IMG/VR virus record: IMGVR_UViG_3300037087_000760
Coordinates: 1-64,000 of that record
Direction: 5' to 3' (one strand)
Length of the DNA: 64,000 bases
Below, in pieces: positions 5,909 through 30,581 of this stretch. Numbering within the stretch: the first letter of the stretch is position 1; each line of letters opens with the position of its first letter. The translations under genes were made by a program, and so were the position numbers. A model generated the notes under the pieces. That model had not been told where the DNA came from. It worked only from the letters and a program-made list of their open reading frames with translations, and did not search any database.

Positions 5909-6319
5909 ATGAAACATATAATTAATTTTTCGAATTTTGTAATGATTAAAGAGAATCAATCATCTTTAAAGCAAAAACAATTAGAAATAATATTAAAAAC
6001 TAATCCAATGATTGATGATTATCATACTGGAATTAGAGATTTGAAAGATATAAAAACTGCAGAAGAAGCATTTTCAGAATCTATTAAAAATAATGAGAGT
6101 TCTTTTGATGATTTTAGTGTTGAAGATATGAAAGAATCATTAAAGACTAAATTGATTACGGTATATTCATCACATCCAATAAAAAATGGAGTATTCGTTA
6201 CTCCAAGTAAAATGGATGCAAAATCATATGCTGGTAATGGTGAGATTTATCAAAAAAGAGTAAACATATTAGATATCGCTTGGATAGATCAATTTGAAGG
6301 ACAATATGCTAAATTTTAA
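5909..6319 (+). CDS. CTS-like protein with possible ADP-ribosyltransferase-like fold
   Basis: MKHIINFSNF..IKE; ITVYS...FVTPSKMDAKSY...EGQY pattern. Confidence 0.45.
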   Translation: MKHIINFSNFVMIKENQSSLKQKQLEIILKTNPMIDDYHTGIRDLKDIKTAEEAFSESIKNNESSFDDFSVEDMKESLKTKLITVYSSHPIKNGVFVTPSKMDAKSYAGNGEIYQKRVNILDIAWIDQFEGQYAKF

Positions 6320-6957
6320 ATATCTTGATCATTCAATTCGTCCAGTAAAACCTTTTCCCCGAATTTATTTTTTAATCTATCTAACCAATCATCAGTCTTA
6401 ATTTTAACCATCCAAATCTGATGTGATTTATCTTGAGCTTTGGCCTTGCATACTACACCTTCCATCAATCCATAATCATTTCTTTTCACACTATTGATGA
6501 ATTCTTGATTAAGATTACCATGATGAATCAATCTGGGAATTTCCATATGTCCAAAATCTTCTATAAATCTTTTTGGATCTACAAATCCTTTGGTAACAGG
6601 ATTCACATCGAACAACACCAGATTCATCTGATCTTTCGGGTCAATATGTCTACCAGCAAACGAATTTGGGCCATACCATTCACAAAAAACAATAAAATTT
6701 TGAATATTCCTATAATCTTTATTCTTTTTGAATACTTCGGATAGTCCATCTCCATATTTATTCAAAAATAAAGGAATAGCCATTCCAAAATCTGGATTCT
6801 TTGCATCTATCATACATTTACGAGTACCAAATTTATACCATCCTCTTTTCTTTGACCATTCAAAACGTAAATTAGAACCATCCAATTTATCGAAGGCATA
6901 AACCACTTCACCCACTAAACGCTTTCCGTAATAATCTATGTGATCGTATTGTTTCAT
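6316..6957 (-). CDS. RNA ligase (Rnl2-like adenylyltransferase domain)
   Basis: Motif I KLDGSN, CEWYG, FDV, EGVVCK, KIK. Confidence 0.75.
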   Translation of the reverse strand: MKQYDHIDYYGKRLVGEVVYAFDKLDGSNLRFEWSKKRGWYKFGTRKCMIDAKNPDFGMAIPLFLNKYGDGLSEVFKKNKDYRNIQNFIVFCEWYGPNSFAGRHIDPKDQMNLVLFDVNPVTKGFVDPKRFIEDFGHMEIPRLIHHGNLNQEFINSVKRNDYGLMEGVVCKAKAQDKSHQIWMVKIKTDDWLDRLKNKFGEKVLLDELNDQDI

Positions 6958-7232
6958 TTTTCTTTTAATTGTTTTGTTAATTCCTTTCTTCTTTCAATTG
7001 CTTTCTCTTTATCTTCCCATTTTTCAATGAAAGTTTTTTTGAAATAGAATTTGTAATAAATAACATAAAATTTCCCTTCTTTTTCAATAACATATCTCCT
7101 TGTGGTAAATAAAGTCAACTCACTCATTAAGTAATTCCATTTTCCCTCGAAAGCAAAATGATATGTCTTTGTCCCGTATGATATATAGACAGAGAATTTA
7201 CTACCGTTTATATAAAATTTTTTAAAGTTCAT
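6954..7232 (-). CDS. Hypothetical protein
   Basis: Overlaps neighbours in operon-like packing. Confidence 0.55.
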
Positions 7233-9252
7233 TTTCTATTTTTTCATAATGAGAAAAAGTCAAATTGTTTATAGCTCTCCCCTGTGATAATGTTCTAAGT
7301 GTTGTTATAAAACCAAACTTCTCAGCCAAAGGTGATTGAACTTTGAGGATTATAGTCGAATCTGGTAATGTATTAATAGATACTATCGTAGAACGATGTT
7401 TATTAAGTTCACTAATTATATCACTCAAATATTCTTCTGGTGTCGTAATTTCTTCATCCATGATAGGTTCAAGTAAACACGGTTTACCTTTCATATAAGC
7501 CTTCGGAAACGAAATCTTCACACAAGTTTCAAAGGCGTATGGGCTTGAATCCACAACATGAGTAGAACCATCTATGATTGTTACTTTCAAACTTTCGATT
7601 TCGTTACCACCCAATGGACCACTAATCATACATTCTTTAAAAGCCTTTTCGATAGAAGTCATATATTCTCTTGGAATGTTTCCACCTTTAACCTCATTCA
7701 CAAAAATTAAACCCTTTGTATCATCGGATACAGGTTCTATTCTATACTCAATCTCAGCAAACATACCCTTTCCACCAGTTTGTCTTGATAATCTTTCTTT
7801 GTGTGTTACTGGTTGAGTTATTGTTTCTCTATAAGAAACTTTTGGTTGTCCTGTATTACATCCGACATTAAAATCAGTAATCAATCTACTTAAAATCACA
7901 TCCAAATATAATTCGCCCATACCACTAATAATGGTTTGTCCATTTTCATCTATCTTAACAGTAAATGTAGGATCTTCCTCAGTAAGTTTTTGAAGAGCAA
8001 ATCCTAATTTATCACTATCCTTATTTGTTAAGGGTTCAATGGTTATTGAAATAACTGGTTTTGGAACAATCATATTCTCAAAATGGAATGTATCTTTTGT
8101 TTCACAAAGAGTATCACCAGTTCGTAAATCTTTTATTCCAACAATACCACAAATATCACCAGCACCAACAGATTTTACTTCTATTTTCTTATTGGCTTGA
8201 ATGGTAAATAATCTTGAAATTCTTTCTGATTGTCCTGTTCTGGAATTATAAACAACTTGACCAAGTTTAAGCACACCAGAATAAACTCGAATCATAGATA
8301 ATTTTCCAGTATTTTTATCTGTCGAAATTTTAAAAACCAAAGCTGATAATTTTTCATCTTCACTTGGTCTAATTTCAACTTGTTCCGAATCTCTATTGGC
8401 ATAAATAATACCCCTATCAACTGGAGATGGTAAAAAATTCACCACAGCATCAAGTAATGTTTGTACTCCCTTATTTTTCTTAGCAGATCCACACAAAATA
8501 GGAACAATAGAAAAATCTAATGTTAAACTACGAAGATTTTTAATTATTTCTTCATTCGTTATCAATTCAGGTGTTTCCAAATACTTCTCAAAAAAGTCAT
8601 CGTTATGTTCCGAAATAGATTCAATCATTTTAATTCGGAATTTCAATGCCTGATCTAAGTATTCTTCAGGTATTACAGAAACACTATATTCCTGACCTAA
8701 TGTTTCGGAAGCCCATGTAATCAGTTTCATATCTATAAGGTCAATAACACCTTTGAAATTACTTTCACTTCCTACGGGAAGTTGAATCACAACTGGTTTC
8801 GATTTAAGTCTATCTTGAATTTGATGTACTACATTAAAGAAATCAGCTCCAATCCTATCCATCTTGTTTACAAAGGCTATTCTTGGTACTTTATATCTGT
8901 TGGCCTGTCTCCAAACTGTTTCGGATTGAGGTTGTACACCGCCGACTGCACAGAAAACAACAACGGCCCCATCTAATATTCGGAGTGAGCGTTCAACCTC
9001 AATCGTAAAATCAATGTGGCCGGGAGTATCTATAATATTTATCTTATGATCTTTCCAATACGATGTAACAGCAGCTGCCATAATCGTTATACCTCGTTCT
9101 TGTTCCTGAGGCATAAAATCGGTTACTGTATTACCATCGTGAACCTCTCCCATTTTATGATTCTCACCAGTATAATACAATATACGCTCAGTCAATGTGG
9201 TTTTTCCGGCATCGATATGGGCTACTATTCCTATATTTCTGTTAAGATTCAT
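7222..9252 (-). CDS. fusA: Elongation factor G
   Basis: [42 protein letters not shown]; 676 aa. Confidence 0.95.
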
Positions 9253-9399
9253 ATTTAATTTTTATTATATTTTCGAAATTTAATGTCGTTTAAAATGATG
9301 TTTATAAACGACATAATGACCGAAATCAGTCTGTAATGTAGGATATAAACAACAAAAAGTATATGTATAACATATCTTAAATTTTATTTATTTTATTTG

Positions 9400-9474
9400 A
9401 GTCAGAGGAGGGATTCGAACCCACGATTGTACGGTTTTGCAGACCGGTGCTTTTGACCACTCAGCCACCCTGAC
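9400..9474 (-). tRNA. tRNA-Cys(GCA)
   Basis: Full cloverleaf, anticodon loop CT-GCA-AA, T loop TTCGAAT, U73. Confidence 0.9.
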
Positions 9475-9593
9475 GAATTATTCTTCTTTGGATTCCTCTA
9501 ATCTTTTCCTGTCGAATTCTAACCATTCATCCAGTTTTTCATCAGTAAAAGAATTGAGTAATTCTACAAAATCCTCATATAAAGTATCCAAAT

Positions 9594-10214
9594 CTATTCC
9601 TTTTTCCATTTTACATTTAATGACTTATCGAATACTAACAAATATCTATGTTTACGACTTCGAGGTCTCCATTCACCCTCGACATCTTTCACTTTCCCCC
9701 TTGATTGCTTTATATATGTTCCATCTGGTTTTTTAATCCAGAAATCATTTTTGGGTTCTGTTAAACCATAATATTGAAAATTACATGCTTTATATATCGT
9801 ACCTAAATGAAAATCAGCATCAGCATAACTCAATATAACTCTAACTTTCGTATCTTTTCTCAATTGACGAATCGCCCTCGATACAAACCAACTGGTAATA
9901 TTATGTTCTACTTTTTGAATATCTGGATGAACACATAATCTACTCAACTCAAATAAACCCTCTTGATCATTTCTTTCCAATCCTAACATCCCCTTAGAAA
10001 GTTCTGGAACTGGAAAACCAGTGAAAATAATCACACCAACTAATTGTTCATTTTCAAACAGACCGTAATTAAAACCACTTTTAAATCCTCTGGAGATGTC
10101 TTTGAGATAATGAAATTTCAATAATAATTCACCAGCTTGTTCTTTGGTAATTCTACTCACATTGAAATTTTCTTTCATACCCTCATTTATAAACTCCAAA
10201 AATGTTTTTATCAT
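9594..10214 (-). CDS. mom: Mu Mom-like DNA adenine modification protein with CTS-like N-terminus
   Basis: FHYL, GLFENEQLVGVIIF, ELSRL, SWFVSRAIRQL, ILSYAD, HLGTIYKACNF; start MIKTFLEFINE just after late motif at 10220-10229. Confidence 0.8.
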   Translation of the reverse strand: MIKTFLEFINEGMKENFNVSRITKEQAGELLLKFHYLKDISRGFKSGFNYGLFENEQLVGVIIFTGFPVPELSKGMLGLERNDQEGLFELSRLCVHPDIQKVEHNITSWFVSRAIRQLRKDTKVRVILSYADADFHLGTIYKACNFQYYGLTEPKNDFWIKKPDGTYIKQSRGKVKDVEGEWRPRSRKHRYLLVFDKSLNVKWKKE

Positions 10215-10249
10215 GATTGTATATATTAATATACTCAATCATGAATTAG

Positions 10250-10342
10250 AAGCGGGGGTAGGAGTCGAACCCACTATCTAAAGGTTATGAGCCTTTAATG
10301 ATTTATGTTGACGAATCAACAATTCCGTTTCACTCTCCCGCA
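10250..10342 (-). tRNA. tRNA-Met(CAT), initiator-like, with hairpin inserted in D loop
   Basis: AAAGG-CTCATAA-CCTTT arm, T arm intact, 1:72 mismatch; D loop contains TGTTGA-TTCG-TCAACA. Confidence 0.7.
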
Positions 10343-10356
10343 ATGTATTAAAATAG

Positions 10357-10445
10357 TAGCGGATGTAAGATTCGAACTTACGACTTCCTTATGGGAAGTT
10401 TCAGCTTATGAGACTGAGGAGATAGGCCAACTTCTCTAATCCGCG
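10357..10445 (-). tRNA. tRNA-Met(CAT) with long variable arm
   Basis: C1:U72 mismatch, TCAGT-CTCATAA-GCTGA, variable hairpin ACTTCC-CATAA-GGAAGT. Confidence 0.75.
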
Positions 10446-10451
10446 ATGTGT

Positions 10452-10552
10452 GTCCTACTGTTGGTGCGACCAACCTTTCTGGAACTCATTATACCGTAGG
10501 TTAGAGCGACCAACTTTATTAGTTCAATGATATTTCCCTCTGAATTAGTAGG
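10452..10552 (-). ncRNA. Unknown tRNA-sized structured RNA
   Basis: Closed by GTCCTACT/AGTAGGAC; two similar GTTGG-TCGCn-CYAAC hairpins; sits between two tRNAs. Confidence 0.5.
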
Positions 10553-10558
10553 ACTTAG

Positions 10559-10630
<72 letters not shown>

Positions 10631-10635
10631 ATATA

Positions 10636-10884
10636 TTATTTCAATTCATGTCTGCACAATGGACATTCTTTAATTTTTATCAACCAATGAATAGTTCTCA
10701 CTACCGTTTTTTCTGGGTCATCAAAACACACCTTTTCACCATCCCAAATTCCTACGATTGATGTTTTCACAGTTTTACCATTAACTCTTTTTATGTTATG
10801 GTATTGAACTAAATCACCTTTCTTAATATCATCTAATTGTTTACCAATCAGATTTCCGTAATTGTCGTATTTACTTTCTTCCAT
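10636..10884 (-). CDS. Hypothetical protein inside tRNA cluster
   Basis: 82 aa ORF with own TAnnTTTG promoter. Confidence 0.65.
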   Translation of the reverse strand: MEESKYDNYGNLIGKQLDDIKKGDLVQYHNIKRVNGKTVKTSIVGIWDGEKVCFDDPEKTVVRTIHWLIKIKECPLCRHELK

Positions 10885-10888
10885 TTTA

Positions 10889-10920
10889 CAAAGATATAAA
10901 TAAATATTCTAATTAAAAAA
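10889..10920 (-). promoter_or_regulatory. Bacteroidota-type promoter (TATCTTTG with upstream T-run)
   Basis: Matches -7 consensus TAnnTTTG. Confidence 0.7.
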
Positions 10921-10926
10921 TCATTG

Positions 10927-10999
10927 AGATCGGAGAGGGAATCAAACCCCCGTCTCTGAGGTTGCAGCTCAGCACCTATTTACACTCGGCCATCCGACC
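10927..10999 (-). tRNA. tRNA-Cys(GCA)
   Basis: CTGAG-CTGCAAC-CTCAG arm, U73. Confidence 0.8.
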
Positions 11000-11004
11000 A
11001 TTTG

Positions 11005-11077
11005 AGCGATAAGTGGGGGTCAAACCCACGACCTTCAGCTTGGGAAGCTGACACTCTATCAACTGAGCTATTATCGC
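11005..11077 (-). tRNA. tRNA-Gly(CCC)
   Basis: TCAGC-TTCCCAA-GCTGA, U73. Confidence 0.9.
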
Positions 11078-11130
11078 ATCCGTTTGACACATCCTTTGAC
11101 ATCACCCTCTCTCCGTTATATCAAACAGCG

Positions 11131-11202
11131 AGCGAGTAATCAGAATCGAACTGACATCATCGGTATGGTAAGCCGATACACTACACATTGTGCTATACTC
11201 GC
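11131..11202 (-). tRNA. tRNA-Gly(ACC), 31:39 mismatch
   Basis: TCGGC-TTACCAT-ACCGA, Gly-type acceptor, U73. Confidence 0.75.
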
Positions 11203-11277
11203 GAATCAGTACCCGCACTTTCCGCCTTAATTATTCCCTGTTACACTGCGGTTAGGGAGTTGGTTATGATAGACCTG

Positions 11278-11360
11278 AGCGGGAGAAGGGATTCGAACCC
11301 TCACCTGAAGTTTGGAAGACTCCTATGCTAGCTTACGCGACCGTTAAACACCACTCCCGC
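11278..11360 (-). tRNA. tRNA-Gly(TCC) with D-loop insertion
   Basis: GGAGT-CTTCCAA-ACTTC; 19-nt D loop containing GC-GTAA-GC. Confidence 0.8.
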
Positions 11361-11371
11361 GAGTGATTTTG

Positions 11372-11442
11372 AGCAGATAATGAGAATCGAACTCACATCA
11401 AAAGATTGGAAATCTCTTACACTACCATTGTGCTATATCTGC
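11372..11442 (-). tRNA. tRNA-Gly(TCC)
   Basis: AGAGA-TTTCCAA-TCTTT, U73. Confidence 0.9.
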
Positions 11443-11448
11443 GTAAAA

Positions 11449-11553
11449 GGTCAGTATGTCGAATGTATTCGGACTGATTTTCGTTTTGCACATTCCTAAT
11501 CATCTGTCTTAACATCTCAGTTCACCGCCATTGTGCTACCGCGTTTACTGACC
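11449..11553 (-). ncRNA. Unknown tRNA-sized structured RNA
   Basis: Closed by GGTCAGTA/TACTGACC; carries D-arm-like TAGCACAATGG; fills the gap between two tRNAs. Confidence 0.45.
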
Positions 11554-11554
11554 T

Positions 11555-11629
11555 TGGAGCGGGATGCGGGATTTAAACCCGCGACCTGAAGTTTGGTAAA
11601 CTTCCGCTCTATCACTGAGCTAATCCCGC
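11555..11629 (-). tRNA. tRNA-Gly(ACC) with encoded CCA
   Basis: Perfect GAAGT-TTACCAA-ACTTC arm, U73-CCA. Confidence 0.9.
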
Positions 11630-11717
11630 GTGGGAGGCTATCTAAACTCTTTGACCCAATCAGATTTCTCCTGTCATGAGTTAACTTCGCCTTATTAGTT
11701 TTTCGAATGTTTTTTAG

Positions 11718-11789
11718 TAGCCCCGGCGGGAATCGAACCTGCATCCAGAAATTAGAAGTTTCTTGTTCTATCCATTGAACTACGGAGCC
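11718..11789 (-). tRNA. tRNA-Arg(TCT)
   Basis: AGAAA-CTTCTAA-TTTCT, canonical cloverleaf. Confidence 0.9.
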
Positions 11790-11838
11790 ATACTTTATAT
11801 AAACTATTTACCACCATTAAGTTTAATATTAATTATTG

Positions 11839-11916
11839 TAACCCTGAAGGGATTCGAACCCTCATTTTCATCCGTTATGCACAATCGAGTTTAGAAAACT
11901 CAGCCATTACAGGGCT
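11839..11916 (-). tRNA. D-armless tRNA-Arg(TCT)-like RNA with 22-nt variable region
   Basis: Acceptor AGCCCTG/CAGGGTT, TGAGT-TTTCTAA-ACTCG arm and T arm intact; only TAATGGC between acceptor and anticodon arm. Confidence 0.6.
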
Positions 11917-11921
11917 ATTTG

Positions 11922-12003
11922 TACCGATGGAGAGATTCGAACTCTCACTTCCGATGGAAACAAGTTCCTAAAACTTGCGTGTCTACCATTCCACCACACC
12001 GGC
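11922..12003 (-). tRNA. tRNA-Leu(TAG)
   Basis: CAAGT-TTTAGGA-ACTTG, class II variable arm, A73. Confidence 0.9.
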
Positions 12004-12029
12004 TTAAAAAGTTAAATAAGTTGTGATAT

Positions 12030-12124
12030 TGTACACCATACCCAACCCAGAGTCGAACTGGATTAGTTGGGGTCTCGAACCCCGCTTCACACAACCACCT
12101 ACTACCGTTCAGTATTATTCAACC
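12030..12124 (-). ncRNA. tRNA-derived element with two T-arm-like hairpins
   Basis: GGGG-TTCGAGA-CCCC and CCAG-TTCGACT-CTGG plus D-like TACT-GAACGGT-AGTA. Confidence 0.5.
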
Positions 12125-12128
12125 TTAG

Positions 12129-12198
12129 CAGTACAAGCAGGAATCGAACCTACATCCACCCTCTACTGAGGGTACTCTTTCCATTAAGCTACTGTACT
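12129..12198 (-). ncRNA. tRNA-like RNA lacking an anticodon loop (AGTA tetraloop)
   Basis: Acceptor, D and T arms canonical; CCCTC-AGTA-GAGGG in place of anticodon arm; G73. Confidence 0.75.
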
Positions 12199-12262
12199 TA
12201 CACATCAATTTTATTCTAGCTTATTATGATGTGATTTACACTTTTGATGTAAATATCTTTTA

Positions 12263-12330
12263 GTACTCTAAAAGGATTCGAACCTATACTCCTCGCTTAC
12301 GCGAGTGTGCTACCATTACACCATAAAGTC
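12263..12330 (-). ncRNA. tRNA-like RNA lacking an anticodon loop (GTAA GNRA tetraloop)
   Basis: GTGT-AATGGTA-GCAC D arm, CTCGC-GTAA-GCGAG, TTCGAAT T loop. Confidence 0.7.
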
Positions 12331-12430
12331 AACTTTCGTCATTGACACTGACATATCATTTCGGAAAGAACACATATTTTACTCCTTTCTGATTGTCAGA
12401 TCTTACTCGTTTCAAATTCCAGTGTTTTTG

Positions 12431-12503
12431 CAGGCAGTACGGGAGTTGAACCCGCTCCGAACGCCGTGACAGGGCGACATCTTAACCGTTTGACCTACTG
12501 CCT
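12431..12503 (-). tRNA. tRNA-Asp(GTC)
   Basis: CT-GTC-AC loop, G73. Confidence 0.85.
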
Positions 12504-12521
12504 ATGTAGGGGAACATTCTG

Positions 12522-12598
12522 CGGGCCCAGTGGGATTCAAACCCACCTGTTATTCCTGATCGACAGTCAGGTAGACACATCCAGCATCTCCTGAGCCC
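12522..12598 (-). tRNA. tRNA-Asp(GTC), divergent
   Basis: CCTGA-CTGTCGA-TCAGG, 8-nt variable loop, T loop TTTGAAT, G73. Confidence 0.75.
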
Positions 12599-12609
12599 AT
12601 TCATTATTG

Positions 12610-12709
12610 CGGTAGGAGTTGGGATCGAACCAACATATAAAGCATTCATCCTATCAGACTACTTCTGATGTCCATCGGTGGCACCCTATGAACTTTATGC
12701 TATCCTACC
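12610..12709 (-). ncRNA. tRNA-like RNA with intact acceptor/T arm and expanded centre lacking a canonical anticodon arm
   Basis: GGTAGGA/TCCTACC-G, GTTGG-TTCGATC-CCAAC, internal ATCAGA-AGTAG-TCTGAT hairpin. Confidence 0.65.
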
Positions 12710-12729
12710 ATTTATTTTTAGTATCCAAT

Positions 12730-12762
12730 ATGTCAAAGAACATATTATAATGTCAAAGAAAC
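12730..12762 (-). promoter_or_regulatory. Tandem boxA-like antitermination elements
   Basis: Two copies of TTCTTTGACAT on the tRNA-coding strand, 20 nt apart. Confidence 0.5.
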
Positions 12763-12770
12763 ATTATAAT

Positions 12771-12848
12771 TGGCGGTACATTACGGTTTCGAACCGTTGA
12801 TTTTACATGGGTGACAACCATGTTCCTCACCAAGAGGCCTAATGAACC
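12771..12848 (-). tRNA. tRNA-Asp(GTC) with encoded CCA
   Basis: CATGG-TTGTCAC-CCATG, G73-CCA. Confidence 0.8.
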
Positions 12849-12854
12849 ATTTTG

Positions 12855-12985
12855 AGTCGGGAGCAGGAATCGAACCTACAGCTCTGGTTTAGGAGACCGA
12901 AGTAACTGTAACCATCGCCACTCTTTCACAAGAGGGAATATTTAGAACAGTGTTTTTAAGCGTGTTGCCATTACACTATCCCGAC
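12855..12985 (-). ncRNA. 131-nt tRNA body carrying an inserted anticodon-display module (Arg CCT loop)
   Basis: GTCGGGA/TCCCGAC acceptor, D and T arms canonical; insert has CTCTT-GTGA-AAGAG, GTTACTTC then GGT-CTCCTAA-ACC. Confidence 0.7.
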
Positions 12986-12990
12986 ATAAA

Positions 12991-13080
12991 AAGATTTTAG
13001 AGATATTCACCACTGAGTATTGTTTGAAAACAAATTTGCAGTTTGTCGAAGTAACCCAGATAAGTTCACTACTAAATCTT
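12991..13080 (-). ncRNA. Stand-alone anticodon-display module (Cys GCA loop)
   Basis: Closing stem, GTTACTTC, ACAAA-CTGCAAA-TTTGT, AATATC. Confidence 0.65.
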
Positions 13081-13093
13081 CTTTTAAAAATAT

Positions 13094-13167
13094 ACAGAGA
13101 ATGTTTTCAAAAAGTATATTTGGTAAACATTATGAGTGTTTGATGTAACTCTTCGAACCGCTTCTGT
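13094..13167 (-). ncRNA. Stand-alone anticodon-display module (Met CAT loop)
   Basis: ACAGA/TCTGT stem, GTTACATC, AAACA-CTCATAA-TGTTT, AACATTC. Confidence 0.65.
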
Positions 13168-13205
13168 AAATTTCATTCAATATTTTAAAGAACTATACTT
13201 ATTAA

Positions 13206-13243
13206 AAACAAAAAAACCCAACCGTTATTATCCGATTGGGTTC
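13206..13243 (-). terminator. Attenuator terminator upstream of RNA operon
   Basis: AACCCAATCG-GATAATAA-CGGTTGGGTT followed by T-run. Confidence 0.85.
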
Positions 13244-13265
13244 ATTTGTTTATCTTTATATTTTC

Positions 13266-13340
13266 TTAATGCAAAACAAACCCAATCAGAAATCTATCAT
13301 CTCTGCCACAATCCATTCCGATTCTTACTATATTTTCCAT
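13266..13340 (-). CDS. Putative 24-aa attenuator leader peptide MENIVRIGMDCGRDDRFLIGFVLH
   Basis: ORF 3' part TCTGATTGGGTTT is complementary to the 5' arm of the terminator; not in ORF track. Confidence 0.7.
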   Translation of the reverse strand: MENIVRIGMDCGRDDRFLIGFVLH

Positions 13341-13373
13341 TTGTTTCTGCGTTAATTGGGATTTAATTTTGTT

Positions 13374-13434
13374 TATATATTATACTTTAAAAGTCGTATT
13401 TTTCTATTTTTAGTAATTTTTTTCGAAAAAGTTT
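13374..13434 (-). promoter_or_regulatory. Promoters of the RNA operon: AAACTTTT-N14-TAAAAA (13407-13434) and late AATATATA (13374-13381)
   Basis: Both recurrent motifs present upstream of the leader. Confidence 0.55.
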
Positions 13435-13443
13435 AATTTTTCT

Positions 13444-13647
13444 TTAAATAGTTTTCTTCTTTTTAGCCGGTTTGAAATCTTCTTTCATTAATTCATCTAT
13501 GGCTTCTTGTTTCTTCATGGGTTCACTTACAAGATATTTGCCAGCTATAATACCATACTTTCCTGTGGGTTTACCACTATTAAGTAACGGTACTACTTTA
13601 AACCCTAAATGTTGAAACTCAACACGACCAATTTTACCTCTTGCCAT
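13444..13647 (-). CDS. Small basic hypothetical protein
   Basis: Likely start MARGKIGRVEF. Confidence 0.65.
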   Translation of the reverse strand: MARGKIGRVEFQHLGFKVVPLLNSGKPTGKYGIIAGKYLVSEPMKKQEAIDELMKEDFKPAKKKKTI

Positions 13648-13740
13648 TTTACTCCTTTTTTTAAAAAGTTTTTGAGAGTGGGGATACATTCATACCCCCA
13701 TCCTCAAATCCGACCTTTTCACTTTAACACAATCTGAAAA

Positions 13741-13778
13741 CTTTGACAAAGATATGTCAAATATTTGGAAGAAAAAAA
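13741..13778 (-). promoter_or_regulatory. Bacteroidota-type promoter straddled by inverted repeat TTTGACA-N6-TGTCAAA
   Basis: TATCTTTG at 13747-13754 inside the palindrome. Confidence 0.6.
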
Positions 13779-14123
13779 TTATTTCAATATTTTCTTTAAT
13801 TTTCTTTTTCTATATATGTTAATCAATTCTTCTTCTGAACACCAACCAACCTTTTCAAATAATCTATAATACCTATTACCATTGATGATTGTATTTAGAA
13901 GTGTTCCCGGCTTTGTTAAAATTCCAATTATGAGTTTATCTGGATTTTTGATATGTTCAACCATTATTGCATCGTAAGCTCTTCTCAGAATGACATTTTG
14001 TTCTGCCATAACATCCACAATAGCTTTTTTCTTACCGACAGGTGGTATTATTGTAATTTCTTCAGTTGTTTCAAATTTAATGAACTTAGCTGTAAATATC
14101 TCTATTTTAAGATTCTCATTCAT
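13779..14123 (-). CDS. Hypothetical protein
   Basis: Operon-like overlap. Confidence 0.6.
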   Translation of the reverse strand: MNENLKIEIFTAKFIKFETTEEITIIPPVGKKKAIVDVMAEQNVILRRAYDAIMVEHIKNPDKLIIGILTKPGTLLNTIINGNRYYRLFEKVGWCSEEELINIYRKRKLKKILK

Positions 14124-14481
14124 CTTCTTCGAAAACTACTTTTTTAAATATGATTTTTTTATCTAACTCGATTTTATTTTCTTTTATTAAAATTTTTATT
14201 TTCGTATGTACAAAACAATTCAAATGTGAAATTAAAACTGGATCAATTCCTTTTTCTTTTAAAGAAGTCAATGTGGATGTTTGTTCTGTTTTTATTAAAT
14301 GTAATATATATTCTTTAATATAAGAGGGTTGTCCCTTATTCAAATATGAACACATTTCATTAAATCTTCCAATGAACTTTGAAAAATATTTTTTTTGATT
14401 CTTTGGAAGAAGATTAATTCTTTCTGCTATTATGTTTATAATAGGAAATTTATTTGGATCTCCGAAAGTGTCTACATTCAT
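14116..14481 (-). CDS. Hypothetical protein
   Basis: Operon-like overlap. Confidence 0.6.
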   Translation of the reverse strand: MNVDTFGDPNKFPIINIIAERINLLPKNQKKYFSKFIGRFNEMCSYLNKGQPSYIKEYILHLIKTEQTSTLTSLKEKGIDPVLISHLNCFVHTKIKILIKENKIELDKKIIFKKVVFEEDE

Positions 14482-15236
14482 TTGAAATATTCTTTAGCTG
14501 TTGGATAAATGGGAAGTGTTCCAAGATCGTTACGAATGTAATCAATTGGTGGTTGACTTTCCAGAATATCAAGACAAACAAAATCGTCAATCAATTCATC
14601 TTTTGTTGGAAAATTTTTGTATGTTTTCGACAAAGTAAATCTTTGGGCACCTTCTTCAAGTTCAAGTTCCCAACCATTTCCTTCATTAGAAACATTATAA
14701 GGACCAACAATTCCTCTCACAATAACTCTATATTGATGGGCGTATGCTTCTTTTTTAATTAAAATTCCGATACGATTTTCTCCACCATAATCTCTTTCAC
14801 AAATACAAATTAATTGTGTAGCTAATTCTTTCTCATTAAAATATTCATTATCCCAATATTCTTCAATGATTGTGGTGGATTCTTCCATTTTATCAAATAA
14901 TAATTCTTCCGTTTTATTTTTTGGTTTTCTGTCAGTGAAGAATTTTCTTGCCGGTCTGTTCTGAATCCAGTTATTTAATTCCAGATTCTTTCGATCTAAT
15001 ATTTTTGTATGAATGTGTTCAAGATAATCGGTGATATTTTCAAAAGAGAAAATTGATTTATCGTAGATAATTCCACCTTTCATTAGGATATCTACTAACA
15101 TTCCAGATGATTCACTAACTAATAAGGATAATTGATCGTCATTTAAGTTAGAATCAAATTTTTTAGCAGATTCATTCCCAATGGTGAGTTTCTGTTTGGT
15201 ACAGAACTGTAAATATTTAAAAGCCGAATCTTTCAT
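14478..15236 (-). CDS. Hypothetical protein
   Basis: 252 aa ORF. Confidence 0.7.
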   Translation of the reverse strand: MKDSAFKYLQFCTKQKLTIGNESAKKFDSNLNDDQLSLLVSESSGMLVDILMKGGIIYDKSIFSFENITDYLEHIHTKILDRKNLELNNWIQNRPARKFFTDRKPKNKTEELLFDKMEESTTIIEEYWDNEYFNEKELATQLICICERDYGGENRIGILIKKEAYAHQYRVIVRGIVGPYNVSNEGNGWELELEEGAQRFTLSKTYKNFPTKDELIDDFVCLDILESQPPIDYIRNDLGTLPIYPTAKEYFK

Positions 15237-15468
15237 TTTCTAAAGCTATTTTAACATCAGGATATCTTCGATGATTTGTGAAATTACCATTGATTAAGTC
15301 CGCACACATCCAACCATCTTTCACTTTCCAAATGTGTTTCTTGAATTTCTTAAACATGATTGGAAAGAAAGGGTTATCGAACCTTTTATTTAATTTATCC
15401 TGATGATGATATTCTATTTCATATCCCAATGAAATAGCTAATTCTTTTGCTTCCAAATCATCTCTCAT
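15217..15468 (-). CDS. Hypothetical protein
   Basis: Operon-like packing. Confidence 0.6.
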   Translation of the reverse strand: MRDDLEAKELAISLGYEIEYHHQDKLNKRFDNPFFPIMFKKFKKHIWKVKDGWMCADLINGNFTNHRRYPDVKIALENERFGF

Positions 15469-28577: not shown

Positions 28578-30581
28578 TTAAAGATTAACTTTCTTATTTT
28601 GAATGCTATTTTTTGATACAACCCTGACGATATAAGTACCATTAACTACATTGGTAGGAATGGTATTATTTTCATCATATATCTTCAAATGTTGAATTTC
28701 TTTACCCAATACATCATAAATATAAACATCAGATTCACCTTTATTATTAGTGATATAAACATTCTTATCATAAGAATAGATGTTTAATGATGTACTTACG
28801 ATATTATCGTTCACACCCGAAAGAGTACTTCCGAAATGTACCAGAAAACGATTGGGAATATCTGAAGTATCAGCCGTGAAAGTATATATTGGTTGTGTTT
28901 TTAAATTGATAATTTTATTCAATTTTGTATCTTCTAAAGTTACTTCATTTGAAAATGATAATTGAGTAGCTGTTAAAATATAACTTCCAGAAACCCCGAC
29001 AACCAAACCAACCTTTACGGTGGTGGCGTCCGATTCTGGAAATGTGTTTATACATTCCATTTCATTATCTTTTAATGAATAAATCTGAGGAATATTGGAA
29101 CTACCCATCCATTTTTCGACCATCCAATAATTAGGATTTCCTATCACATCATTATTGAATTTTATAACTGTTTCATCTGATGCATTGTTTCCTTCAACTT
29201 TTAATCGAAGAGAATTCGGAGTTGCCACCGTAATTTCCTTATAAAAAGGTCTGGAATTGTGCCTTCTACAATTATTATTGAATTGAATATATCCATTCGT
29301 ATATGGTTGATCAACCTTAACAAAGAATCCTTGCATCGGGGCTATGAACCTTGAACCACCATTTGTACTATCAGAATTATATCCATTTAACTTACCGATA
29401 TAAACCTTATAATAATAATTACCATTAACATCATAATCTAAAACCCAGCAATGAGGTAACATATTGGAAACATATATTTCTTGAGATTCCCAATTAATAG
29501 CACTCGGATATGGATTACCAATTAAATTATAACCACCACCAGTATTTGGGGTTCTTGTTAAATTTACTTGAATTTGTCCATTATTCAATCCCTGAGTGGT
29601 ATAGAAGGTATCAACTTTTGTAATACTATTACCGTTTCCATCAGATGACCAAACTTCATATCCCCTTCCAAGTGGTAATGGAATGTTAGTTGGAACAATA
29701 TATTGACTCCAAACACCAGCTACTTCGTCATAGTATCGTAAATAATCATGAAGAAAGGTATTGGAGACGGCATTTGGAATAGGTGATGTAATATAATGCC
29801 ATTGACCACCTTTAATATATTGTTCTACTTTAGTTGTTCCATTTAAAGTTATCTTATTGTCATTTACTGTTGTGTCAGATAAGATTGATGCGGTATTCGT
29901 TGAATTAGATTCCAAGGTCAAATTATATCCATCGAAAGTACCCATAATGGTTGTTCTTGTAATCGGAGCCAATTTAAAATTAACCTTTTGACTATTGGTA
30001 TTGGTAAGTAGATTTATTTTATTATCCACAGTTAAACCAATGGTTGTAATATATAGTGTTGTGGAAGATGATACTGATTGTAGAATTACACTTTTATCAT
30101 TACCATTACCTGTTTTTTGAATGTATAACGAACCAATGATCTGATTCGGTACATTGGTAATAGTAATATTACTATTCGTACTGATTACCAACTGATCATT
30201 ATTCTGTGGTGTATTACGAGTTGGATTCCAATTTGAACCCGTTTGCCAATTACCATTATTAGAACCGATCCATGTATATGTGGTTTGACTAAATCCAACA
30301 TTACACATCATCATAAAAAGAATCAAATAAAATGTTTTTTTCATAAAATTTGGATTTTTTCTGTTTTTTATTTCTTCATAGATTTTATATGCACCATAGG
30401 TTACACCCAATACAATGAGTATTACAACTCCATCATCTATTGGTGCACCAACTGGTGTTCCACCACCCGGAATCGGATTTCCACCGGGATCTGGGGGATT
30501 GGGTTGATCAGCTAATGAGGTAATACAAATACCGATAGTAAACAAAATCAGCAATACAAAGTTTTTCAGTTTATTTTTCAT
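28578..30581 (-). CDS. PID-CTERM-type peptide fused in frame to a T9SS type A sorting-domain secreted protein
   Basis: GAPIDDGVVILIVLGVTYG; second signal peptide from 30344; C-terminal VYIYDVLGKEI...GTYIVRV; TACCTTTG promoter at 30610-30617. Confidence 0.8.
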   Translation of the reverse strand: MKNKLKNFVLLILFTIGICITSLADQPNPPDPGGNPIPGGGTPVGAPIDDGVVILIVLGVTYGAYKIYEEIKNRKNPNFMKKTFYLILFMMMCNVGFSQTTYTWIGSNNGNWQTGSNWNPTRNTPQNNDQLVISTNSNITITNVPNQIIGSLYIQKTGNGNDKSVILQSVSSSTTLYITTIGLTVDNKINLLTNTNSQKVNFKLAPITRTTIMGTFDGYNLTLESNSTNTASILSDTTVNDNKITLNGTTKVEQYIKGGQWHYITSPIPNAVSNTFLHDYLRYYDEVAGVWSQYIVPTNIPLPLGRGYEVWSSDGNGNSITKVDTFYTTQGLNNGQIQVNLTRTPNTGGGYNLIGNPYPSAINWESQEIYVSNMLPHCWVLDYDVNGNYYYKVYIGKLNGYNSDSTNGGSRFIAPMQGFFVKVDQPYTNGYIQFNNNCRRHNSRPFYKEITVATPNSLRLKVEGNNASDETVIKFNNDVIGNPNYWMVEKWMGSSNIPQIYSLKDNEMECINTFPESDATTVKVGLVVGVSGSYILTATQLSFSNEVTLEDTKLNKIINLKTQPIYTFTADTSDIPNRFLVHFGSTLSGVNDNIVSTSLNIYSYDKNVYITNNKGESDVYIYDVLGKEIQHLKIYDENNTIPTNVVNGTYIVRVVSKNSIQNKKVNL

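What the first reader, a model, noticed from the sequence alone, without database searches (positions are those of the whole stretch)
12855..13167. Three-copy RNA module that displays different anticodon stem-loops, one grafted into a tRNA
Seen: each unit has a closing stem, RGYG, a conserved GTTACWTC, then within 0-1 nt an anticodon-type hairpin with a YT-NNN-AA loop, and AAYAT before the closing strand. The loops are Met CAT (13125-13141, perfect 5 bp), Cys GCA (13030-13046, perfect 5 bp) and Arg CCT (12884-12900, 3 bp). The Arg copy is circularly permuted, capped by a GTGA tetraloop and fused to a tRNA acceptor/D/T scaffold. All three amino acids match tRNAs in the operon, and these are the first RNAs transcribed after the attenuator. 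I do not recognise this motif. Inferred: a programmable anticodon-decoy family that titrates host anticodon nucleases or modification enzymes; mRNA or synthetase regulation is an alternative.
Basis: partly seen in the sequence, partly recalled or inferred. Interest (0 to 1): 0.92.

Follow-up and report, generated by a model that had tools for sequence, protein, structure and literature searches.

The report
Interrupted phage tRNA plus orphan hairpins
At the head of a giant phage's tRNA operon sits an arginine tRNA gene whose anticodon stem is split by a 60-base structured insert, preceded by two stand-alone hairpins with the same insert motif and tRNA-like anticodon loops. Unexplained inserts in huge-phage tRNA genes have been reported before, but this position and the body-less copies have not.

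Summary
The motif is real. On the minus strand, three copies of box 1 (RGYG), an 8-11 nt spacer and box 2 (GUUACWUC) each abut a 7-nt anticodon-type loop: CAU, GCA and CCU.

The "grafted, permuted" copy is better read as a tRNA-Arg(CCU) gene (12985-12855). A 60-nt insert (12958-12899) splits the 5' strand of its anticodon stem. With the insert deleted in silico, ARAGORN calls a perfect tRNA-Arg.

The same architecture occurs in related huge phages, in tRNAs with other anticodons (CAC, CAU, UCU). A further box1-box2-hairpin RNA with a GUA loop heads an operon in a third phage.

Units A and B have no acceptor, D or T arms. They are tandem ~86-nt hairpins and look like body-less derivatives of the insert plus anticodon arm.

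The insert is neither a BHB nor a group I intron, and nothing matches in Rfam. The closest precedent is the "enigmatic" tRNA introns of Lak megaphages.

I rate this a new variant of a known, unexplained kind, of moderate to high interest.

The parts
13204..13243 (-). Terminator-like hairpin plus U run, ending the upstream protein operon
   Evidence: 11-bp stem followed by a T run. Homologous hairpins precede the same motif in L126/L273 and L261.
13175..13193 (-). Conserved operon-head motif GTTCTTTAAAATATTGAAT. Probably a promoter; a processing signal is not excluded.
   Evidence: 84% identical copy at 12741-12723. The same motif heads tRNA/ncRNA units in L120-L122, L126/L273 and L261.
13088..13173 (-). 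Unit A, a stand-alone hairpin RNA. P1 13173-13163 / 13098-13088. Box 1 AGCG 13162-13159. P2 13157-13148 / 13115-13106. Box 2 GTTACATC 13149-13142. Anticodon-type hairpin with CAU loop 13141-13125.
   Evidence: The minimum-energy fold reproduces P1, P2 and the hairpin, z = -2.6. Coordinates. No tRNA arms.
12992..13079 (-). Unit B, a tandem paralogue of A. P1 13079-13069 / 13002-12992. Box 1 within GTAGTG 13072-13067. P2 13059-13054 / 13018-13013. Box 2 GTTACTTC 13055-13048. Anticodon-type hairpin with GCA loop 13046-13030.
   Evidence: A versus B local alignment z = 2.3. Compensatory changes in P1 and in the hairpin stem in a manual alignment. Weak fold when taken alone.
12959..12985 (-). tRNA-Arg(CCU) 5' exon: acceptor strand, D arm, G26, C27, U28
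   Evidence: Perfect 7-bp acceptor pairing with 12862-12856 and a 4-bp D stem.
12899..12958 (-). 60-nt intervening element inside the anticodon stem (between positions 28 and 29). It comprises an A-rich linker, a long arm at 12951-12905 capped by GUGA, box 1 GTGGCGA at 12921-12915, and box 2 GTTACTTC at 12906-12899.
   Evidence: Deleting it turns 'no tRNA' into tRNA-Arg(cct) in ARAGORN. The arm is conserved with compensatory changes in L261. C versus the L261 homologue z = 17.6.
12855..12898 (-). tRNA-Arg(CCU) 3' exon: G29-U31, loop CUCCUAA, 3' stem strand, variable loop, T arm, acceptor strand and discriminator U
   Evidence: (Rfam tRNA 23.1 bits for 12921-12855, below the 29-bit threshold).
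6316..6957 (-). RNA ligase gene (PF09414). Context only: a candidate sealing enzyme if the element is spliced.
   Evidence: It lies next to EF-G in the relatives L120, L121, L122, L126 and L129 as well. Any role in splicing is inference.

Best explanation
The three copies are one clade-specific intervening element of huge-phage tRNA genes, seen in two states.

State 1 (unit C) is an otherwise perfect tRNA-Arg(CCU) gene. A 60-nt element interrupts the 5' strand of its anticodon stem between positions 28 and 29. The element consists of an A-rich linker, a long GNRA-capped arm, box 1 (GURGYR), a spacer and box 2 (GUUWCWUC). Box 2 ends exactly where the anticodon arm resumes.

State 2 (units A and B) keeps only the element's 3' half (box 1, spacer, box 2) and an anticodon-type arm. 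It has lost the acceptor, D and T arms and is held together by new closing helices. The L126/L273 RNA 'D' is intermediate: it has an acceptor-like stem plus ACCA, no D arm and a degenerate T arm.

All three window units are co-transcribed from one promoter-like motif as the first RNAs of the tRNA operon.

Most likely mechanism (inferred, not shown): a protein endonuclease recognises the boxes together with the anticodon arm and removes the element from pre-tRNA-Arg. An RNA ligase, possibly the conserved phage enzyme, seals the exons to give a normal 71-nt tRNA (ARAGORN's 73-base call includes two flanking bases). A and B still offer the box 2/anticodon-arm junction, so the same factor would bind or cut them. 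That would make them processing by-products, or competitors and regulators of that factor.
For: Shown:
- Deleting the insert restores a canonical cloverleaf in four genes from three phages. The anticodons differ (CCU, CAC, CAU, UCU), and none of the full-length genes is called as a tRNA.
- In the two LR756503.1 genes the anticodon stem cannot form at all unless the two parts flanking the insert pair (ACG|GC with GCCGU).
- The insert arm is conserved between the window and L261 with three compensatory pairs. Overall alignment z = 17.6.
- The box1-spacer-box2-hairpin signature occurs five times in 661 kb of clade DNA, always in tRNA operons and with five different triplets.
- D aligns significantly with the window insert, z = 4.0 with 0 of 300 shuffles as good. 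D sits behind the same terminator and promoter-like motif as unit A.
- In a manual alignment, A and B keep their hairpins through compensatory changes: A-U to G-C, G-C to A-U and similar in P1, and two double changes in the anticodon-type stem.

From the literature:
- Conserved, unexplained introns in tRNA genes of huge Bacteroidota phages are on record (bioRxiv 10.1101/356790).

From established knowledge:
- The ribosome contacts the anticodon stem closely around pairs 29-41 and 30-40. A retained 60-nt insert there would probably block decoding, which favours removal.
Against: - There are no expression or splicing data.
- The junctions do not form a bulge-helix-bulge, and no splicing endonuclease gene was identified. 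Pfam and PHROGs found nothing in the neighbouring ORFs.
- The RNA ligase is equally well explained by tRNA repair.
- The split stem in L261 is imperfect (U-G, then an A/A mismatch).
- Plain sequence similarity of A and B to D or to the insert is not significant beyond the boxes (z = 0.0-1.6).
- Unit B is thermodynamically weak.
- No second genome carries A/B-type body-less copies. L261 has two ordinary tRNA-Met genes in that slot.
- Conservation of the box/anticodon-arm core where the tRNA body has decayed (A, B, D) suggests the core may have a function of its own, independent of splicing.
Confidence: 0.45

Rival explanations
1. Retained expansion, not an intron. The insert stays in the mature RNA. 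The tRNA body only supplies processing and stability, and the functional part is the box/anticodon-arm module, which displays an anticodon loop. This includes the first reader's idea that the module titrates host anticodon nucleases, tRNA-modifying enzymes or synthetases.
For: - The box1-box2-hairpin core is the only part kept in all five members, while the tRNA body is complete (C), degenerate (D) or absent (A, B).
- Loops keep U33 and R37, and the A and B loops are identical to loops of real tRNA-Met and tRNA-Cys in the same array.
- The array carries redundant CAU and GCA tRNAs. L273 carries three GUA tRNA-like RNAs in a row.
- From established knowledge: anticodon-loop nucleases acting on initiator tRNA-Met, tRNA-Cys, tRNA-Arg and tRNA-Tyr are known.
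Against: - There is no defence or nuclease context, and no tool here can test binding.
- The anticodons seen (CAU, GCA, CCU, GUA, CAC, UCU) do not match the specificity of any single known nuclease.
- The interrupted genes keep every feature of working tRNAs, including a stem that is perfect only once the insert is ignored. That is what selection for a spliced, decoding tRNA predicts.
Confidence: 0.25
2. A and B are non-functional relics: decaying copies of interrupted tRNA genes, or of a duplicated insert plus anticodon arm. They are transcribed only because they lie between the promoter and the first intact gene.
For: - They occur in this one phage lineage only. All other contigs carrying them are 100% identical.
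- Pattern scans of IMG/VR and of part of the metagenome collection found no other copy.
- L261 has normal tRNA-Met genes in the same slot.
- B folds poorly.
- Similarity to D is not significant.
Against: - A and B are only about 47% identical. Yet both keep box 1, box 2, the loop flanks CU...AA and paired stems through compensatory changes, plus an 11-bp P1 and, in A, a 10-bp P2.
- Neutral decay should have destroyed these before the rest of the sequence.
Confidence: 0.2
3. A and B are leader elements of the operon, such as a processive antitermination signal or an RNase entry site. On this reading their resemblance to anticodon arms is incidental.
For: They are the first transcribed structures after a terminator and a promoter-like motif, in front of a long array of structured RNAs. 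Unit D holds the same position in L273.
Against: - This does not explain why the same boxes and hairpin sit inside a tRNA gene.
- It does not explain why the loops are exact copies of tRNA anticodon loops.
- Other operon heads with the same motif lack such units.
Confidence: 0.07

Closest known systems
'Enigmatic' conserved introns in tRNA genes of Lak megaphages and other very large phages (Devoto et al., bioRxiv 10.1101/356790)
   Same: Huge phages of Bacteroidota. Short inserts, not group I, in tRNA genes. Removing the insert restores the tRNA. The inserts are highly conserved and the mechanism is unknown. The authors suggest such introns are common in large phage genomes.
   Different: The one Lak-A1 example I parsed by eye (tRNA-Phe GAA, MK250016.1 29858-30028) has an insert of about 105 nt that appears to sit in the anticodon loop at 37/38. 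Here the insert is in the stem at 28/29 or 29/30. BLAST finds no similarity. Boxes 1 and 2 and body-less copies are not described there.
Archaeal tRNA introns at non-canonical positions, including 29/30 and 30/31, with near-identical introns spread over different isoacceptors (review PMC4090602)
   Same: Position inside the anticodon stem. Size of tens of nucleotides. Related inserts in tRNAs with different anticodons. Protein-dependent removal is expected.
   Different: The defining bulge-helix-bulge at the splice sites is absent here (checked by hand). The host is bacterial. No splicing endonuclease was found.
Group I introns in bacterial and phage tRNA anticodon loops
   Same: These are the only established kind of tRNA intron in bacteria and their phages (PMC4090602). 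One is present in a relative's array (L127 8825-9048).
   Different: Group I introns are self-splicing ribozymes of about 200 nt or more, located in the loop. Here the insert is 45-65 nt, in the stem, with no Rfam hit.
Split and tri-split tRNAs of Nanoarchaeum and Caldivirga (PMC4090602)
   Same: Anticodon-bearing pieces exist apart from the tRNA body, and split points include 29/30.
   Different: A and B lie upstream of the 5' exon and have no complementary leader or trailer to pair with the exons. Nothing suggests trans-splicing.
Anticodon-arm mimics in regulatory RNAs, such as the E. coli thrS operator (from my own knowledge)
   Same: A hairpin that copies a tRNA anticodon loop outside a tRNA.
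   Different: Those mimics sit at the ribosome-binding site of a synthetase mRNA. Here no ORF follows, only tRNAs.
GOLLD RNA and other ornate RNAs in phage tRNA arrays, and the T4 stable RNAs C and D (the latter from my own knowledge)
   Same: Non-tRNA structured RNAs co-located with phage tRNA genes, with unknown function. GOLLD with an embedded tRNA-Lys is present in relatives (L121, L127).
   Different: There is no GOLLD match in this window. A and B are about 86-88 nt, far smaller than GOLLD.

Membership tests
Canonical tRNA (Rfam RF00005 / ARAGORN) | Cloverleaf with acceptor, D, anticodon and T arms at standard spacing | tested here: not met
   Unit C as encoded scores 23.1 bits in Rfam against a 29-bit threshold and gets no ARAGORN call. 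A and B have no acceptor, D or T arm.
Interrupted (intron-containing) tRNA gene | Removing one contiguous insert yields a canonical tRNA | tested here: met
   Deleting window 12958-12899 gives tRNA-Arg(cct). The same holds for L261 (Val cac) and for LR756503.1 173957 (Met cat) and 207213 (Arg tct).
Interrupted (intron-containing) tRNA gene | The insert is actually excised from the RNA | not testable with these tools
   No transcript data are available.
Archaeal-type BHB intron | Both junctions lie in 3-nt bulges flanking a 4-bp helix | tested here: not met
   Checked by hand on the sequences. In the window gene, CACG upstream of the 5' junction cannot pair with UACU upstream of the 3' junction. 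LR756503.1 207213 also fails (GCAA against CAAA).
Group I intron (RF00028) | Match to the ribozyme core, and location in the anticodon loop | tested here: not met
   No hit in the window at the gathering threshold or at E <= 10. The insert is 60 nt and lies in the stem.
Huge-phage 'enigmatic' tRNA introns (Lak type) | A short, conserved insert, not group I, in a tRNA gene of a very large phage | tested here: met
   (EF-G clade including the 735-kb LR756503.1).
Huge-phage 'enigmatic' tRNA introns (Lak type) | Same position and sequence family as the Lak introns | tested here: not met
   The Lak-A1 tRNA-Phe insert, parsed by eye, is at 37/38 and about 105 nt long. There is no BLAST similarity. 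Only one Lak intron, in the first 300 kb of Lak-A1, was examined.
GOLLD RNA (RF02032) | Match to the covariance model | tested here: not met
   No hit in the window. Relatives do have it.
Anticodon-nuclease or enzyme decoy | Binds or is cleaved by an anticodon-loop-specific protein and thereby spares the cognate tRNA | not testable with these tools
   Only the loop signature could be checked (U33 and R37 in 5 of 5 members).
Synthetase-operator type anticodon mimic | Lies in the 5' leader of a synthetase (or other) mRNA at its ribosome-binding site | tested here: not met
   No ORF follows A, B or C; the next genes are tRNAs.

The most novel reading that the evidence does not exclude
The box1-box2-anticodon-arm unit is a self-contained functional RNA module that huge phages can run with or without a tRNA body.

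One version: it is the recognition handle of a previously unknown, protein-dependent tRNA splicing system of bacterial viruses. The cut falls at box 2 / position 29 and the phage RNA ligase seals the exons. Orphan units A, B and D would then act as regulators or competitors.

The other version: it is a programmable display of anticodon loops that sequesters anticodon-loop-directed host factors.

Either version would be a new mechanism in phage-host conflict over tRNA.
Probability: 0.22. Interest if true: 0.85.

Novelty: new variant of a known kind. Interest (0 to 1): 0.62.

Why it matters
- **Textbook gap.** Bacterial and phage tRNA introns are described in the literature as group I ribozymes in the anticodon loop. 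Short inserts in huge-phage tRNA genes have been noted once as "enigmatic" and never explained.
- **Defined anatomy.** This locus gives them a concrete structure. The insert lies inside the anticodon stem. It has two conserved boxes, one ending exactly at the junction, and a covarying arm. The same design occurs in tRNAs of different specificity in at least three phages.
- **Testable question.** That makes "how are these removed, and by what enzyme?" open to experiment. If the inserts are removed, there must be a tRNA splicing pathway in bacterial viruses unlike both the archaeal and the group I routes.
- **Possible separate role.** The body-less copies at the operon head suggest the junction module may have a function of its own.
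- **Annotation.** Standard tRNA finders miss all of these genes, so tRNA counts for huge phages are underestimates.

Tried and rejected
- **Rfam.** I scanned the window, the 9000-13500 region at E <= 10 and the L126 unit. Only tRNA matches came up.
- **BLAST against 50,697 phage records.** Searches found nothing informative.
- **Pattern scans for A/B-type units.** IMG/VR returned only the source contig once hits were filtered for a paired stem.
- **Pattern scans for the Arg gene.** Three patterns returned only the source contig.
- **Other contigs of the same phage.** All are 100% identical over 12600-13300, so they carry no covariation information.
- **Neighbour-protein route.** L264 has different synteny, and P0130 has no DNA on file.
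- **Generic descriptor search.** A search for any closed anticodon-like hairpin gave about 65 background hits. Such hairpins are meaningless without the boxes.
- **Automatic alignment of A and B.** MAFFT/RNAalifold put them out of register and predicted no pairs. The structural alignment had to be made by hand, which biases it.
- **Covariance model.** I did not build one, because the five members could not be aligned in register by the available aligner.
- **Ideas considered and dropped:**
  - Permuted or split tRNA: the anticodon hairpins are contiguous and no exon partners exist.
  - Armless tRNA: there is no CCA or acceptor end in A or B.
  - Anticodon-cassette shufflon: no recombinase was found nearby.
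  - Tetraloop receptor, K-turn and box C/D guide motifs: none is present.
  - T-loop relic in unit A (GGTTCGAA): noted, but not interpretable.

Full report
**Context**

The window is AT-rich (about 30% GC). It belongs to a very large phage.
- It encodes EF-G (7222-9252), an RNA ligase (6316-6957) and a Mom-like protein inside a tRNA array.
- It is identical to IMG/VR contig 3300037087_000760, which is 211 kb. The same proteins occur on contigs of up to 736 kb.
- Its EF-G groups with EF-G from uncultured huge phages, including the 735-kb LR756503.1 (72-83% identity). The next best matches are Bacteroidales EF-G at about 56%, so the host is probably in Bacteroidota.
- The finding lies at the upstream end of a minus-strand array of more than 15 tRNA and tRNA-like genes.

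Yes, in its essentials.
- GTTACWTC occurs seven times in the window against 3.45 expected. Three occurrences lie within 250 nt on the minus strand.
- Each of the three is followed within 0-1 nt by a hairpin with a 7-nt loop: CUCAUAA, CUGCAAA or CUCCUAA.
- RGYG lies 9-11 nt upstream in all three.
- A terminator-like hairpin (13243-13214) and a motif GTTCTTTAAAATATTGAAT (13193-13175) precede unit A. The motif recurs at 12741-12723 and in front of tRNA/ncRNA units in every relative examined. The units are therefore most likely the first RNAs of a minus-strand transcription unit.
- Unit A (13173-13088) folds as P1, P2 and the hairpin in its minimum-energy structure, z = -2.6.
- Unit B (13079-12992) is weak when folded alone, z = +0.7. 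In the 331-nt context it still forms P2 and a shifted hairpin. In a hand alignment with A it keeps P1 and the hairpin stem through changes on both sides.
- A and B are about 47% identical. Their local alignment gives z = 2.3.

**What unit C really is**

The distal 5' part (12985-12959) is a perfect acceptor strand, D arm, G26, then C and U. The proximal part (12898-12855) begins GGU, continues with the loop and ACCAG, then a variable loop, a T arm and a perfectly complementary acceptor strand.
- The two nucleotides CU before the insert pair with AG after the loop. So the 60 nt at 12958-12899 sit inside the 5' strand of the anticodon stem, between positions 28 and 29.
- ARAGORN finds no tRNA in the full sequence. 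Once the 60 nt are removed it calls tRNA-Arg(cct) with a flawless cloverleaf.
- Rfam's tRNA model reaches only 23.1 bits on the interrupted gene.

**The same design in relatives**

- L261 (JGI 3300042261) carries a homologue at 12272-12399, alignment z = 17.6. It has the same order of parts.
  - Its arm base reads GUUAUAU/AUGUAAC, where the window has UAAAUAU/AUGGUUA. That is three compensatory pairs.
  - Box 2 is GUUUCAUC and the loop is AUCACAC.
- LR756503.1 has two genes, at minus-strand positions 173957 and 207213. In these the stem ACG|GC pairs with GCCGU across inserts of 69 and 45 nt (sequence lengths). Without the split only 2 bp could form. Deleting the insert gives tRNA-Met(cat) and tRNA-Arg(tct).
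The 'circular permutation' therefore describes motif order rather than a shared fold.

**The wider family**

I scanned 661 kb of clade DNA for box 2 (one mismatch allowed) followed by a hairpin with U33 and R37. Twenty-one distinct places matched, and six of them have RGYG upstream.
- Five of those six are the family: window A, B and C; L261 C; and a new one, 'D', at L126 9406-9521 (= L273 12259-12378).
- D has box 1 AGCG, an 11-nt spacer, GUUACUUC and a hairpin with loop CUGUAAA (GUA).
- D is closed by GGGGGUG/CACCCCC followed by ACCA. It has no D arm and only a degenerate T arm.
- D is the first RNA after a homologous terminator and promoter-like motif.
- D aligns significantly with the window insert, z = 4.0.
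- The series therefore runs from a complete interrupted tRNA (C), through a reduced body (D), to no body (A, B). The box1-box2-anticodon-arm core is the constant part.
- Plain sequence similarity of A and B to D or to C outside the boxes is not significant. Their membership rests on the boxes, their spacing, the abutting hairpin and the operon-head position.

**Comparison with known kinds**

- Rfam has no match other than tRNA.
- The insert is far too small for a group I intron and lies in the stem, not the loop. A true group I intron and GOLLD RNAs with an embedded tRNA-Lys are present in relatives' arrays.
- According to the review PMC4090602, bacterial tRNA introns are group I introns in the anticodon region. 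Archaeal introns occur at non-canonical positions, including 29/30, but depend on a bulge-helix-bulge. I checked the junctions of the window gene and of LR756503.1 207213 by hand, and they cannot form that motif.
- The closest precedent is the report of 'enigmatic', highly conserved introns in Lak megaphage tRNAs, with the remark that such introns may be common in large phages (10.1101/356790).
- In the first 300 kb of Lak-A1 I found one such gene, tRNA-Phe(GAA) at 29858-30028. By my reading of its sequence it carries an insert of about 105 nt at 37/38, in the loop. It has no sequence similarity to the present element.
- The present elements are therefore a different variant of an already noted but unexplained phenomenon.

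**How it most likely works**

What is shown is the anatomy and its conservation. What follows is inferred.

I favour excision.
- The interrupted genes keep every feature of working tRNAs.
- The anticodon stem is perfect only across the insert.
- A 60-nt domain at 28/29 should be incompatible with the ribosome's grip on the anticodon stem (established knowledge).

Box 2 ends exactly at the 3' junction, and an A-rich stretch follows the 5' junction. Both are plausible recognition elements for a protein endonuclease. The RNA ligase gene conserved next to EF-G across the clade could seal the exons, although tRNA repair explains its presence equally well.

A and B retain the box 2/anticodon-arm junction. 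The same factor would therefore be expected to bind or cut them.

The main rival is that the insert is retained and the box/anticodon-arm core is itself the functional unit. It gains weight from the survival of that core where the tRNA body has decayed. Nothing available here can separate these readings.

A third reading, that A and B are relics in decay, is disfavoured by their compensatory changes. It is not excluded, because no second lineage with body-less copies was found.

**Limits**

- Only three phage lineages carry the W-type boxes.
- All other contigs of this phage are identical.
- The A/B structural alignment was made by hand.
- No covariance model could be built, because the aligner did not put the hairpins in register.

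**Verdict**

The 'grafted module' is an intervening element in a tRNA gene's anticodon stem. The orphan hairpins A and B are new and unexplained. Function remains open.

Noticed in passing
L121:6927-7390 and L127:7922-8381; L127:8825-9048: GOLLD RNAs (163 and 152 bits), each with an embedded tRNA-Lys, and a group I intron (112 bits) lie in the tRNA arrays of related phages. This window has no GOLLD match.
   Followed up: partly
window 10355-10250 (-); L126 about 110-203: A tRNA(CAU)-like gene missed by both tRNA finders. It has an extra hairpin inside the D loop, capped by UUCG here and by AAUA in L126. The hairpin and the anticodon stem covary between the two phages.
   Followed up: partly
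window 11370-11203 (-): A tRNA-Gly(UCC)-like gene with a D region of about 30 nt that includes a GUAA-capped mini-hairpin. Rfam scores only 27.4 bits over part of it.
   Followed up: no
window 12709-12611 (-): A 99-nt tRNA-like RNA with perfect acceptor and T arms. A large two-hairpin domain takes the place of the D and anticodon arms, and there is no obvious anticodon.
   Followed up: no
window 10557-10446 (-) and 11554-11443 (-): Two RNAs of about 112 nt between tRNA genes, each closed by an 8-9 bp stem (GTCCTACT/AGTAGGAC and AGGTCAGTA/TACTGACCT). Their nature is unknown.
   Followed up: no
window 12262-12128 (-); L120:9040-9174; L122 about 2222-2350: A conserved two-hairpin element whose stems covary between phages. 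It is followed by an odd tRNA whose anticodon ARAGORN cannot read ('tRNA-???').
   Followed up: no
window 10445-10356 (-): A 90-nt tRNA(CAU) with a long variable arm, which is unusual for a Met or Ile2-type tRNA.
   Followed up: no
L120:8650-8730, L121:7620-7700, L122:1580-1660: A conserved hairpin (AGAAUAC UUACAG ... CUGUAA ... GUAUUCU) lies directly upstream of the GTTCTTTGAA motif. Its UUACAG-CAAACAAAAAC segment resembles the 3' tail of the LR756503.1-type tRNA inserts.
   Followed up: no
L273:12380-12560 and 12570-15364: Unit D is followed by two more non-canonical tRNA-like genes with CUGUAA-type (GUA) loops, then a tRNA-Leu array interrupted by an ORF, then a 418-aa class I aminoacyl-tRNA synthetase gene.
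   Followed up: no
L282 (MK250016.1) 29858-30028 (+): The insert in the Lak-A1 tRNA-Phe(GAA) gene contains a second CUGAAAA sequence preceded by AGCG. This looks like an internal copy of the anticodon loop.
   Followed up: no
L122:16351-16457; L120:440-556; L122:1659-1775: Further over-long tRNA-like genes in relatives. One has a 15-bp hairpin after the D arm and folds with z = -4.9.
   Followed up: no
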